Assembly: GCA_033442325.1 (NCBI GenBank)
Contig: JAWQFM010000006.1
Coordinates: 604,673 to 668,672 of the forward strand
DNA from: Salpingoeca rosetta
Lineage: Eukaryota > Protista > Choanoflagellata
DNA: 64,000 bases
Direction of reading: 5' to 3'
Position 1 is the stretch's first letter. Each line of letters opens with the position of its first letter. This document shows, one piece after another, positions 50,473 to 52,305 of the stretch. The notes beneath the pieces were generated by a model. That model worked only from the letters and a program-made list of their open reading frames with translations. It made no database searches and was not told the DNA's origin. Made by a program: the position numbers and the translations under genes.

Positions 50473-52305
50473 AATGGGGCTGCGGCCGTGGTGGAGAGCG
50501 GTCAGATTACAAGAGATGGGTAATCATGGAACAGTGGCGGTGGTCATGATGGCATGAACGGCGGCTGGCGGCTGGCAGGATGGCGCGGACGGCAAAACCC
50601 AATGGACGCACCCACCAAGCCCTCCCTACCCCCAGCCTCAACTGCAGGGCCAAGCCCACCACTTCTCCGAAACAACAGAGAATATTGTGGCCGTGCAAAC
50701 ACACGTGTGCACGCACACACCAATCACGCACCTCCAACCCACAGCGGGAACACCACCACCACCACAACTGTCCCAATCCACAACAACACCCCGCGCCCTT
50801 TCAACCAACTGTCCAACTCAACCTAAATACCCACCACCACCCCAAACTTCCCAGCCCTTCCAACCCACACCATCCTCGAGCTGCAACCCTCACCTCTCTC
50901 GCCCTCACAACCACTGCACACCATCACCCACCCGATCCTCCAAACACCCACATCCCCTGCTCCCCATTCCCACTCCCGCCAGACACGAAGCACGACCAAA
51001 GCTTGAAACGCACAGCAACGATGCGTGACAGCGCACCAGCCAAACACATGCTCGCCCCCCACCCCACAACCCAAGGATGGGCAATAGCTGGGCGCCCATA
51101 ACACATGCGAGCATGACACCAACGCGAGCGCCGTGCACATGGGCGTGCACAAAACAACGAAGGACAAATGGAAACCGACAAAGGTGTTGGAAAGAGGGCA
51201 CAGACTGTGGAAATGTGACGCCCTGGCCTTTGCCAGTACCCCAGCACGGGCAAACACCAAACCACCACGACCGACACCACCAGCAGAGGGTAGCGATGGC
51301 GGGTGGGAGGTGTTTGTGTGCACTGAGATGCACGCTGGGGAAGGCCATGAACAGGGCGCTGGCACAGACAACAACAGCAGCGTGCCAATGTGTTTGACTG
51401 CCTTTACAACGCGCGAGTGGTCAGACAGGAATCGCCCGCAGAGAACGCAATCAAGTGACATGAAGAGATGGAGACTCGACTGCAACAAACGCAAACACAA
51501 CACCAGCAGTGCAACACACACATGTGTGTGCACGGCGGCTCAGAGCAGGTGATGCACATGCTCGCAAGAACGCAGCAACCACCACACACATCCCCTATAA
51601 ACGGAAGCAAAGGGCGAGCGTGTGCCCAACAGTGGTGGGTGGCGGTGCAAGGCCGTGCCAGCAACGTGCGGTGGAAGAAGGGAGGGGTCAGACGCAGAGG
51701 AAGCGACGAAGAAGCGAGGGAGAGACAGCAAAGGAAAGCAGGGAACGGGACCGAGACAGGCGGGGTGCAACGCAATGTATGCGAAGCACACCTCAATGGG
51801 GGTTGAAGACCACGGGATGTGGGGCTCTCACACCAACCAGCACAATGCAGCACCGGTGGGAGAGGCGAGAAGAAGCAGGGAAGCCGAGCGTGAATGGCAG
51901 AGAAGGGAGGCTGTTCGTGCCAGGCCGTGCAAGAAAGCACAGCAAAGCACGCAGCGAGGACAGATGAAAGAAAGAAAGGGGGGGACAAATGTGTTGGGAC
52001 GAGAACAGAAGTTGCATCATGAAGATGCTGATGGCGGTGATGCCCAACAGCGGACGTGAAGCGCTGATGTGCACATGCACACGTGGCGCGACTGAACGGG
52101 CGAGAAAACCAAAAGCCCTGACAGGAGAAGCGACAAGAGAGATAGAGAGAGCAACGGAAGGAAGGTGCACTGGCTGCCATCTATACGCACGCACACATAC
52201 ACTGCAGCTGATCGCCAGCCGCAACCACAGACCACCGCCAATGATGGTCATTCTCGCCTTGGTGTCATCACCCCGCAATCTCCACCACAGCCAGTGGCAG
52301 CCGCG

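What the first reader, a model, noticed from the sequence alone, without database searches (positions are those of the whole stretch)
50502..50527. D guide predicts methylation of the U5 C45 equivalent, the U85 target
Seen: the guide upstream of box D is UCUCUUGUAAU (plus strand ATTACAAGAGA, 50506-50516). It would pair with UUAC-U-AGAGA at 9 of 10 positions, with a U-U mismatch at the Psi46 position. The 5th nt (50510) pairs with the C of UUAC. Known: U85 guides Cm45 and Psi46. Inference: this RNA is a greatly expanded U85 relative or a convergent equivalent.
Basis: partly seen in the sequence, partly recalled or inferred. Interest (0 to 1): 0.78.

Follow-up and report, generated by a model that had tools for sequence, protein, structure and literature searches.

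The report
Giant U5-directed box C/D guide RNA
The flagged CUGA and its upstream 11 bases look like the real D box and guide of an about 1.8-kb guide RNA in a WDR36 intron, aimed at C45 in loop 1 of this organism's own U5 spliceosomal RNA; that is about six times the stated size limit for this RNA class, but neither the mature RNA nor the methylation has been seen.

Summary
Observation confirmed, interpretation supported in silico. I found the genome's own U5 snRNA in two near-identical copies. The guide pairs at 9 of 10 positions, has one U.U mismatch opposite U46, and puts C45 at the +5 position. No rRNA site does better in that register.

The D box belongs to a complete C/D core:
- A perfect C box lies 1.77 kb upstream in the same intron.
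- The two ends are tied by an 18-bp terminal stem and an 11-bp inner helix.
- The C'/D' pair is UGAUUA/AUGA.
- A second spacer is an 8-bp perfect complement of U5 C34-U41 and puts G37 at +5.

The 1.7 kb between the two halves folds into a long rod (z = -9.6 against shuffles). An H/ACA-like domain sits at its tip, with a pocket that fits U46. The element is single-copy. RNA-run contigs cover the intron interior.

Not shown: the ends and size of the mature RNA, any methylation, and conservation in relatives. The U.U mismatch and the short duplexes argue against efficient methylation.

The scan holds sibling notes on this same intron and none on other DNA.

The parts
50502..50505 (-). Box D, CUGA
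   Evidence: Read directly. Followed at once by CCGC, which pairs with GCGG upstream of box C.
50506..50520 (-). D spacer, 15 nt (CCCAUCUCUUGUAAU). Guide positions 2-11 (50507-50516) pair with U5 U42-A51, with U.U at U46. The G at 50510 faces C45.
   Evidence: Duplex -8.5 kcal/mol with the native loop.
50521..50527 (-). Box C', AUGAUUA
   Evidence: Its sixth base U can pair with the first base A of D' (AUGA), where the consensus has G-C.
50535..50545 (-). 3' strand of the 11-bp inner helix, GACCACCGCCA
   Evidence: Perfect complement of 52240-52230 (I14, 47).
50484..50501 (-). 3' strand of the terminal stem: CCGC (50501-50498) plus UCUCCACCACGGCC (50497-50484)
   Evidence: I13 (13 WC + 1 G.U over 14). 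A possible 6-bp extension, 50483-50478 with 52302-52297, was read by eye.
52273..52292 (-). 5' strand of the terminal stem: GGCUGUGGUGGAGA (52292-52279), UU bulge, GCGG (52276-52273)
   Evidence: The flank duplex of -32.8 kcal/mol is the best of 6,935 same-strand C/D box pairs in the window.
52265..52271 (-). Box C, GUGAUGA (perfect consensus), preceded by G52272. G52272 and the first two box bases give the 3-nt K-turn bulge.
52252..52264 (-). D' spacer, 13 nt. AAGGCGAG (52260-52253) is a perfect complement of U5 C34-U41, with G37 at +5.
   Evidence: Duplex -14.1 kcal/mol. Compact C/D RNAs in metagenome contigs use the same C box, 4 nt, AAGGCGAR, N, AUGA layout.
52248..52251 (-). Box D', AUGA
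52230..52240 (-). 5' strand of the 11-bp inner helix, UGGCGGUGGUC
50546..52229 (-). Interior of about 1.68 kb. The CU-rich 5' arm pairs with the G/U-rich 3' arm into a long imperfect rod.
   Evidence: MFE -825 kcal/mol against -694 +/- 13.6 for block shuffles (z -9.6). 442 pairs span more than 400 nt, against 121-296 in shuffles. The plus strand reaches only -634. Thirty control segments gave -500 to -788.
51391..51454 (-). H/ACA-like hairpin 1. Lower stem 51454-51447 / 51401-51394. The 3' pocket strand GUAAAGG pairs with C39-C45. The 5' pocket strand UCUC pairs with G48-A51. ACA lies at 51393-51391, 14-15 nt from the pocket.
   Evidence: (fold, z only -1.6). Pocket pairing read by eye against the U5.
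51214..51359 (-). H/ACA-like hairpin 2, followed by ACA. AAAGGC pairs with G37-U42 15 nt before ACA. The other pocket strand pairs poorly.
   Evidence: z -5.5. Pocket read by eye. The weakest of the four guide elements.
50246..52432 (-). Host intron (2,187 nt, GU..AG) of the WDR36/UTP21 gene
   Evidence: Spliced joint in RNA contigs of X19 and X20. Pfam Utp21 and WDR36/Utp21 beta-propeller matches on flanking exons, searched exon by exon.

Best explanation
The CUGA at 50505-50502 is the genuine box D of an intron-encoded box C/D guide RNA. Its two halves lie 1.77 kb apart in one intron of the WDR36/UTP21 gene, in a 55-Mb eukaryote that other notes of this scan take for Salpingoeca rosetta.

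After splicing, an 18-bp terminal stem and an 11-bp inner helix, helped by a long rod formed by the 1.7-kb interior, bring C to D and D' to C'. This would let the usual C/D proteins (Snu13, Nop58, Nop56, fibrillarin) assemble.

The D spacer then pairs with U5 U42-A51 and presents C45 to fibrillarin. The D' spacer pairs with C34-U41 and presents G37. An H/ACA-like domain at the tip of the rod offers a pocket for U46.

Functionally this is U85/SCARNA10 (Cm45 + Psi46) combined with an mgU5-38-type guide.

Shown: the sequence elements, their complementarity to the native U5, the predicted fold, and the presence of the intron interior in RNA runs. Inferred: RNP assembly, the size of the mature RNA, and the modifications themselves.
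For: - Native U5 carries the predicted target, 9/10 pairs with C45 at +5. This is the only CTGA-adjacent match to a known U5 Nm site in the window; shuffles give one in 2% of trials.
- Both lineage-specific U5 stem bases are matched by the two spacers (C34-C36 and G48-G50; human has U and A there). Duplex energy falls from -8.5 to -3.1 and from -14.1 to -11.6 kcal/mol with human-like bases.
- The core is complete: perfect C and D boxes, spacers of 13 and 15 nt, and C'/D' UGAUUA/AUGA with a U-A pair where the consensus has G-C.
- Terminal plus inner duplex energy ranks first of 6,935 box pairs. The box and spacer stretches between the two helices are not complementary to each other beyond a few pairs, unlike transposon terminal repeats.
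- The rod fold has z = -9.6 and is strand-specific.
- The element is single-copy in the genome.
- RNA-run contigs cover 50477/50485-52293 without internal joints, at about 4-40% of the exon contig depth.
- The 12 substitutions and one indel seen in other runs all lie in the rod. None lies in the C/D core or the H/ACA-like domain; my estimate for 0 of 12 in 22% of the length is p about 0.05.
- The same C box / AAGGCGAR / AUGA design occurs in several compact C/D RNAs with 6-8-bp terminal stems in metagenome contigs. Drosophila has mgU5-38, mgU5-42 and U85 (PMC3884663).
- The host is a nucleolar ribosome-biogenesis gene.
Against: - The duplex has a U.U mismatch directly 3' of the target base and only 4 + 5 pairs (-8.5 kcal/mol).
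- The D' duplex is 8 bp. An 8-bp D' substrate was not modified in a reconstituted RNP (PMC7229835).
- Eukaryotic C/D RNAs are given as 60-300 nt (PMC7229835); nothing near 1.8 kb is described.
- Contig ends coincide with microsatellites, and the DNA run X8 breaks at the same places. One RNA run joins exon to intron on both sides. So the RNA signal may be unspliced pre-mRNA.
- No Rfam family reaches its threshold, and no CAB box was seen in the hairpin loops.
- No relative's genome could be examined, so conservation is untested.
- The substitutions seen in other runs do not preserve rod pairs more than chance: 5 of 8 against 58% expected.
Confidence: 0.62

Rival explanations
1. The C/D core and rod are real and form a stable intron-derived RNP, but the D spacer does not methylate C45. 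The mismatch next to the target blocks catalysis. The spacer then serves only as accessory pairing that holds U5 for the D' guide and the H/ACA pockets, or it is a decaying guide.
For: U.U mismatch at guide position 6 and a weak duplex. Duplexes of 9-10 bp are needed for activity in vitro (PMC7229835). In U85, Cm45 and Psi46 interfere with each other, so their efficiencies are tuned (PMC5733568).
Against: The register puts exactly C45 at +5. The spacer tracks the lineage-specific G48 and G50 of U5. One mismatch is allowed by common snoRNA target predictors (own knowledge).
Confidence: 0.2
2. The rod is the functional unit and the C/D-like boxes are incidental. Examples: a long hairpin that regulates WDR36 splicing or feeds an RNAi-type pathway, or the remains of an old inverted duplication.
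For: The rod is a very strong and strand-specific fold. One RNA run shows the intron retained with its exons.
Against: My estimate for a perfect RUGAUGA facing CUGA in one internal loop of a 750-bp rod is about 0.3%. It does not explain two spacers complementary to adjacent parts of U5 loop 1 in the +5 register, nor the ACA-terminated hairpins at the tip.
Confidence: 0.07
3. Chance: a CUGA preceded by a sequence that happens to fit U5.
For: Taken alone the D guide match is only p about 0.02 per window. 8-mers complementary to U5 30-56 are not enriched in the window or the intron. Three C boxes in the window are followed by an 8-mer complementary to U5, against 3.5 by my analytic estimate (shuffled windows give 0.35), and the one at 45338 lies in coding-like sequence.
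Against: The conjunction of the best terminal and inner helices of 6,935 pairs with two in-register guides on one 18-nt target has, by my estimate, a chance of 1e-4 or less.
Confidence: 0.05
4. The D spacer is aimed at LSU rRNA. Guide positions 6-15 form 10 contiguous Watson-Crick pairs with LSU 2015-2024 (AAGAGAUGGG), plus a G.U at U2014.
For: This is the strongest duplex of the spacer, -18.2 kcal/mol. The site lies in conserved-looking LSU sequence and is identical in a second rDNA copy. My estimate for such a 10-mer arising by chance is about 0.06.
Against: In the +5 register the target U is a wobble pair and positions 3 and 4 are mismatched. The duplex would abut box C', while only positions 2-11 fit the enzyme (PMC7229835). 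It does not explain the D' spacer or the H/ACA pockets.
Confidence: 0.04

Closest known systems
U85 / SCARNA10 (human, Xenopus, Drosophila)
   Same: A composite guide whose C/D domain encloses an H/ACA domain. The C/D guide selects U5 C45 and the H/ACA pocket selects U46 (PMC5733568, PMC7960923). Here the D guide puts C45 at +5 and hairpin 1 flanks U46.
   Different: About 1.8 kb, against a few hundred nt for U85 (own knowledge). A roughly 700-bp rod separates the two domains. An extra D' guide targets G37. There is a U.U mismatch in the C45 duplex. No CAB box was seen and there is no sequence match to any Rfam scaRNA model. Descent or convergence cannot be told apart.
Drosophila mgU5-38 and compact C/D RNAs found in metagenome contigs (L013, L022, L028, L041)
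   Same: C box GUGAUGA, a 13-nt spacer with AAGGCGAR at the same offset, and D' box AUGA. G37/G38 of U5 lies at +5. mgU5-38 is listed as a known fly scaRNA in PMC3884663.
   Different: Those RNAs are 79-125 nt from C to D and their D spacers are unrelated to U5 C45. The search pattern fixed the shared features, so likeness beyond the pattern is not shown. The organisms behind the contigs are unknown.
[quoted passage not shown]
   Same: Intronic C/D guides for snRNAs that carry a hairpin between D' and C'. G.U-rich pairing in it serves as the Cajal-body signal (PMC4041459). Here 20% of the rod pairs are G.U.
   Different: The hairpin here is over an order of magnitude longer (my reading). No run of consecutive G.U/U.G wobble pairs like the vertebrate element was identified. 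Localisation is unknown.
sno-lncRNAs
   Same: Intron-derived long RNAs protected from exonucleases by snoRNP ends (PMC4234469).
   Different: Those have one complete snoRNA at each end. Here a single C/D motif is formed by the two ends together, and the interior is part of the same folded unit.

Membership tests
Box C/D methylation guide RNA | Box C (RUGAUGA) and box D (CUGA) near the ends, able to form a K-turn with a flanking canonical stem | tested here: met
   GUGAUGA at 52271-52265 and CUGA at 50505-50502. GCGG/CCGC abuts box D with a 3-nt bulge on the C side, plus a 14-bp outer stem.
Box C/D methylation guide RNA | Internal C'/D' pair | tested here: met
   D' AUGA (52251-52248) and C' AUGAUUA (50527-50521), closed by an 11-bp helix 7 nt away on each side.
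Box C/D methylation guide RNA | Spacer pairs with a target so that a modifiable base lies five positions upstream of D/D', in a duplex of about 9-10 bp or more | tested here: inconclusive
   D: 9 of 10 pairs with one internal U.U, C45 at +5. D': 8 perfect pairs, G37 at +5. Both are at or below the length that worked in vitro (PMC7229835).
Box C/D methylation guide RNA | Size 60-300 nt in eukaryotes (PMC7229835) | tested here: not met
   C to D is 1,770 nt, and about 1,809-1,825 nt with the terminal stem. The mature size was not measured.
Box C/D methylation guide RNA | Accumulates as an RNP with fibrillarin, Nop56, Nop58 and Snu13 | not testable with these tools
   Only contigs of RNA runs were available. 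They show the interior is present in RNA, but not its ends or its protein partners.
U85 / SCARNA10 | C/D guide for U5 C45 together with an H/ACA pocket for U46 in one RNA | tested here: met
   Pocket pairing was read by eye against the native U5: 7 + 4 pairs, with ACA 14-15 nt away.
U85 / SCARNA10 | Sequence and structure similarity to the curated family | tested here: not met
   No Rfam match at gathering score in the window. At E up to 10, the only scaRNA-family match was a 13.7-bit snoU89 hit at 52144-52275.
U85 / SCARNA10 | CAB box (ugAG) in hairpin loops and Cajal-body localisation | tested here: not met
   No UGAG in the hairpin sequences shown. Localisation is not testable.
sno-lncRNA | A complete snoRNA at each end of an intron-derived long RNA | tested here: not met
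   Neither end has its own C and D pair. No CUGA lies within 200 nt after the C box, and no C box or stem exists for a compact unit around 50500-50570.
U5 snRNA (the proposed target) | Invariant loop 1, Sm site, 3' hairpin, and a match to RF00020 | tested here: met
   33.4 and 32.8 bits, below the gathering score of 40 because of a 44-nt insertion. Loop CGCCUUUUACU, AUUUUUGG and a terminal hairpin are present. There are two copies with a conserved upstream flank.

The most novel reading that the evidence does not exclude
One intron yields a single stable RNA of about 1.8 kb. A box C/D core at the open end and an H/ACA domain at the closed end are joined by a roughly 700-bp G.U-rich duplex rod. 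This one particle would place the whole modification set of U5 loop 1 (Gm37, Psi43, Cm45, Psi46) in a close unicellular relative of animals. It would be a 'mega-scaRNA' several times longer than any described modification guide.
Probability: 0.35. Interest if true: 0.9.

Novelty: new variant of a known kind. Interest (0 to 1): 0.78.

Why it matters
If the RNA exists as predicted, three things would follow.
- A C/D RNP can form across 1.8 kb, with an enormous structured insert between D' and C'.
- Composite C/D-H/ACA guides for U5 loop 1, known from animals, would then occur in their closest unicellular relatives too.
- It would supply a candidate guide for Gm37, which the human snRNA table (PMC7960923) leaves without one.

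The prediction is directly testable, because the organism can be grown and, to my knowledge, edited. The guide and target also show lineage-specific matching bases, which is the kind of co-variation that makes an in-silico guide prediction credible.

Tried and rejected
- **Rfam on the window:** no match at gathering score, and only noise at E up to 10.
- **U5 search:** RF00020 at the default threshold and three loop-plus-Sm patterns found nothing or false sites. U5 appeared only at E up to 10.
- **rRNA family searches on the whole genome** failed three times. I located the rDNA by short conserved patterns and fetched it instead. Several rDNA copies are truncated, so SSU was taken from L007 and 5.8S and LSU from L011.
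- **A compact snoRNA around 50500-50570:** rejected. There is no acceptable C box, both flanks are C-rich so no terminal stem can form, and D' and C' would be only 2-3 nt apart.
- **Transposon with terminal inverted repeats:** rejected. The element is single-copy, the end complementarity is interrupted exactly at the boxes and spacers, and the CCAUCAU repeats are not placed as a target-site duplication.
- **Antisense exons inside the intron**, suggested by loose ends at 51576 and 52025: the flanking letters are not in the window. Not pursued.
- **Substitutions in other runs** as a test of the rod: uninformative.
- **Orthologous WDR36 intron in other choanoflagellates:** The search of protein representatives with an 83-aa WD40 exon returned only giant WD-repeat proteins. 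The genome search has no relatives of this genome. I did not build a joined spliced protein model; exons were searched one by one by reference.
- **The original U85 paper** is not held, so I could not check whether U85 itself has a mismatch opposite U46.
- **The C box at 45338(+)** followed by a U5-complementary 8-mer lies in acidic coding-like sequence. Taken as chance.

Full report
**What is at the coordinates.** On the minus strand the window reads AUGAUUA (50527-50521), CCCA, UCUCUUGUAAU (50516-50506), CUGA (50505-50502), CCGC. The site lies in a 2,187-nt GU..AG intron (50246-52432, minus strand). Its spliced joint is seen in contigs of two RNA runs. The host gene is WDR36/UTP21: Pfam Utp21 scores E 7.6e-23, and the WDR36/Utp21 second beta-propeller scores 88.6 bits against a cut-off of 84. 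The genome has 55 Mb in 68 contigs. Other notes of this scan take it for Salpingoeca rosetta, which I did not verify.

**The native target.** RF00020 found nothing at the default threshold. At E up to 10 it found two near-identical loci, on contigs C1 and C11 (33.4 and 32.8 bits). Both have the invariant loop CGCCUUUUACU, an Sm site AUUUUUGG, a 3' hairpin, a 44-nt lineage-specific insertion that lowers the score, and a shared upstream flank. I take them as the U5 genes. Numbered from the Rfam-aligned start, the loop positions coincide with human G37, U41, U43, C45 and U46. The sequence after the loop is UAGAGAC, where human has UAAAGAU. Guide positions 2-5 pair with U42-C45, position 6 is U.U opposite U46, and positions 7-11 pair with A47-A51.

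**Chance and rival targets.** Of 295 CTGA sites in the window, two reach 9/10 to some U5 position, as expected by chance. Only this one hits a position that is 2'-O-methylated in human U5. Shuffled windows give such a hit in 2% of trials. In the +5 register no site in SSU, 5.8S or LSU does better. The exact 11-mer target occurs six times in the genome, and none of those is near an rDNA copy. One rival deserves mention. Guide positions 6-15 form ten contiguous pairs with LSU 2015-2024 (-18.2 kcal/mol). There the +5 base is a G.U wobble, positions 3 and 4 are mismatched, and the duplex would run into box C'.

**The D box is one half of a complete C/D core.** A perfect C box GUGAUGA sits 1.77 kb upstream on the same strand, at 52271-52265. 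The flanks pair as GCGG/CCGC directly next to box D, with a 3-nt bulge on the C side as a K-turn requires. A 2-nt bulge follows, then a 14-bp outer stem (13 WC + 1 G.U) at 52292-52279 / 50497-50484.

After box C comes a 13-nt spacer, then AUGA (D'), then 7 nt, then UGGCGGUGGUC (52240-52230). That last stretch is the perfect complement of GACCACCGCCA (50545-50535), which lies 7 nt before C'. So the order is C, spacer, D', [helix closing 1.68 kb], C', spacer, D.

C' departs from the consensus at its sixth base (G to U) and D' at its first base (C to A). These two bases pair in the K-turn's non-canonical stem (established C/D structure, from my own knowledge). The double change therefore keeps a Watson-Crick pair.

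Among all 6,935 same-strand pairs of RUGAUGA and CUGA in the window, this pair ranks first for the sum of flank and inner duplex energies. Its flank duplex is the best of all. The box and spacer stretches between the helices are not complementary to each other beyond a few pairs. This argues against transposon terminal repeats, and the element is single-copy in the genome.

**The second spacer points at the same target.** AAGGCGAG (52260-52253) is a perfect complement of U5 C34-U41, the stretch directly 5' of the D guide's target. With AUGA as D', it puts G37 at +5. Human U5 carries Gm37, Um41, Psi43, Cm45 and Psi46 in this loop, and the table in PMC7960923 lists no guide for Gm37.

On its own this 8-mer is not remarkable. 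Three C boxes in the window are followed by some U5-complementary 8-mer, and the one at 45338 is in coding-like sequence. Such words are also not enriched in the intron.

The weight lies in the conjunction. A pair of boxes singled out by structure alone carries two spacers that bind adjacent parts of one 18-nt target, both in register with known modification sites. My rough estimate for that happening by chance is 1e-4 or less.

Both spacers also match the bases that are specific to this organism's U5 stem. With human-like bases the duplex energies fall from -8.5 to -3.1 and from -14.1 to -11.6 kcal/mol.

**Natural precedents for the 5' half.** A scan of metagenome contigs for GTGATGA-N4-AAGGCGAR-N-ATGA returned 30 loci. 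Several are compact C/D RNAs, 79-125 nt from C to D, with 6-8-bp terminal stems. They fall into at least four distinct sequence types. This exact layout is therefore used by ordinary small guide RNAs elsewhere, probably relatives of the fly mgU5-38 listed in PMC3884663. The pattern itself fixed the shared features, so this shows a precedent and not homology.

**The interior.**
- The 1,787 nt from 52280 to 50494 fold into one long rod. The CU-rich 5' arm pairs with the G/U-rich 3' arm through about 60 helices. 442 pairs span more than 400 nt, and 20% of those are G.U.
- MFE is -825 kcal/mol, against -694 +/- 13.6 for 24 shuffles in 50-nt blocks (z -9.6).
- The complementary strand reaches only -634.
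- Thirty control segments of the window lie between -500 and -788, with 67-283 long-range pairs.

The tip of the rod holds two hairpins that each end in ACA. Hairpin 1 (51454-51391) has an 8-bp lower stem. Its pocket strands pair with C39-C45 and G48-A51, leaving U46 at the base of the upper stem 14-15 nt from ACA (pairing read by eye). Its fold alone is not significant (z -1.6). Hairpin 2 is strongly folded (z -5.5), but only one pocket strand pairs well, with G37-U42. These hairpins are the subject of sibling notes, and I checked them only as far as the U85 comparison needs.

**RNA evidence.** Three runs that show spliced WDR36 contigs also hold contigs covering 50477/50485-52293 with no internal joint, at roughly 4-40% of the exon contig depth. 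This shows the interior is present in RNA and is not spliced out.

It does not show a discrete RNA. The contigs end at microsatellites, as they do in a DNA run. One run joins the exons to the intron flanks. The absence of contigs over the short neighbouring introns is probably an effect of how the assembler simplifies short alternative paths (my inference). Strand and ends are unknown.

The other runs differ from the window at 12 positions and one indel. All of these lie in the rod, and none lies in the core or the H/ACA-like domain (p about 0.05 by my estimate). They do not preserve rod pairs more often than chance.

**What speaks against function.** The C45 duplex is 4 + 5 pairs with a mismatch next to the target. 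The G37 duplex is 8 bp. In a reconstituted eukaryotic RNP, 9-10-bp duplexes worked and an 8-bp D' duplex did not (PMC7229835). The same paper gives 60-300 nt as the size range of eukaryotic C/D RNAs. No Rfam scaRNA model matches, and no CAB box was seen. Conservation could not be tested: no relatives are in the genome collection and the protein route to orthologous loci failed.

**Verdict.** The most likely reading is that the flagged CUGA and guide are the 3' half of a genuine U5-directed box C/D guide RNA of unprecedented length. It would work like U85 combined with an mgU5-38-type guide. I put about 0.85 on the C/D core being real. I put about 0.6 on the D spacer actually directing Cm45. 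I put about 0.35 on the mature RNA being the full 1.8-kb molecule.

The scan holds sibling first-reader notes on this same intron (s1-435880, s1-435985, s1-436105, s1-436228) and one withheld follow-up. It holds nothing on other DNA.

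Noticed in passing
window 49938-50199: RNA contigs of three runs carry 40 letters between the WDR36 exons 49825-49937 and 50200-50243 that occur nowhere in the window. A DNA run also fails to align over 50085-50199. The assembly seems to lack a small exon, or to differ in one, inside a microsatellite stretch.
   Followed up: partly
window 51506-51672 and 52007-52173: Extra contig depth in RNA runs, with loose ends at 51576 and 52025. Each is preceded by AG on the plus strand. The joined letters are not in the window. These could be similar stretches in other transcripts or antisense exons. Unexplained.
   Followed up: partly
L003:1501-1651 and L004:1501-1651: The genome's U5 snRNA exists in at least two near-identical copies on different contigs. 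It carries a 44-nt insertion after loop 1 that pushes it below the Rfam gathering score. Earlier notes of the scan had not located U5.
   Followed up: yes
L013, L014, L019, L020, L022, L026, L028, L041 (metagenome contigs): These are compact box C/D RNAs of 79-125 nt whose D' spacer is complementary to the U5 loop with G37/38 at +5 and whose D' box is AUGA. Several share a D spacer starting AAAUCACAA. They are probably mgU5-38-type scaRNAs of unidentified eukaryotes.
   Followed up: partly
L005, L006, L007/L008 (rDNA copies on C9, C14, C3): Several rDNA copies are incomplete. One has SSU and 5.8S but no LSU match. One has its LSU broken near model position 2120. One has SSU only. Only two loci in the genome hold the sarcin-ricin loop motif. 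This agrees with earlier notes on truncated chromosome-end rDNA.
   Followed up: no
L004:1000-1206 (-): A weak SCARNA2 (RF01268) match of 34.8 bits, below the gathering score of 48, lies about 300 nt from the U5 copy on C11, next to GT repeats. Probably driven by the repeats.
   Followed up: no
window 45338-45360 (+): GTGATGA followed by AAAAGGCG, the complement of U5 36-43, inside acidic coding-like sequence. Taken as chance.
   Followed up: yes
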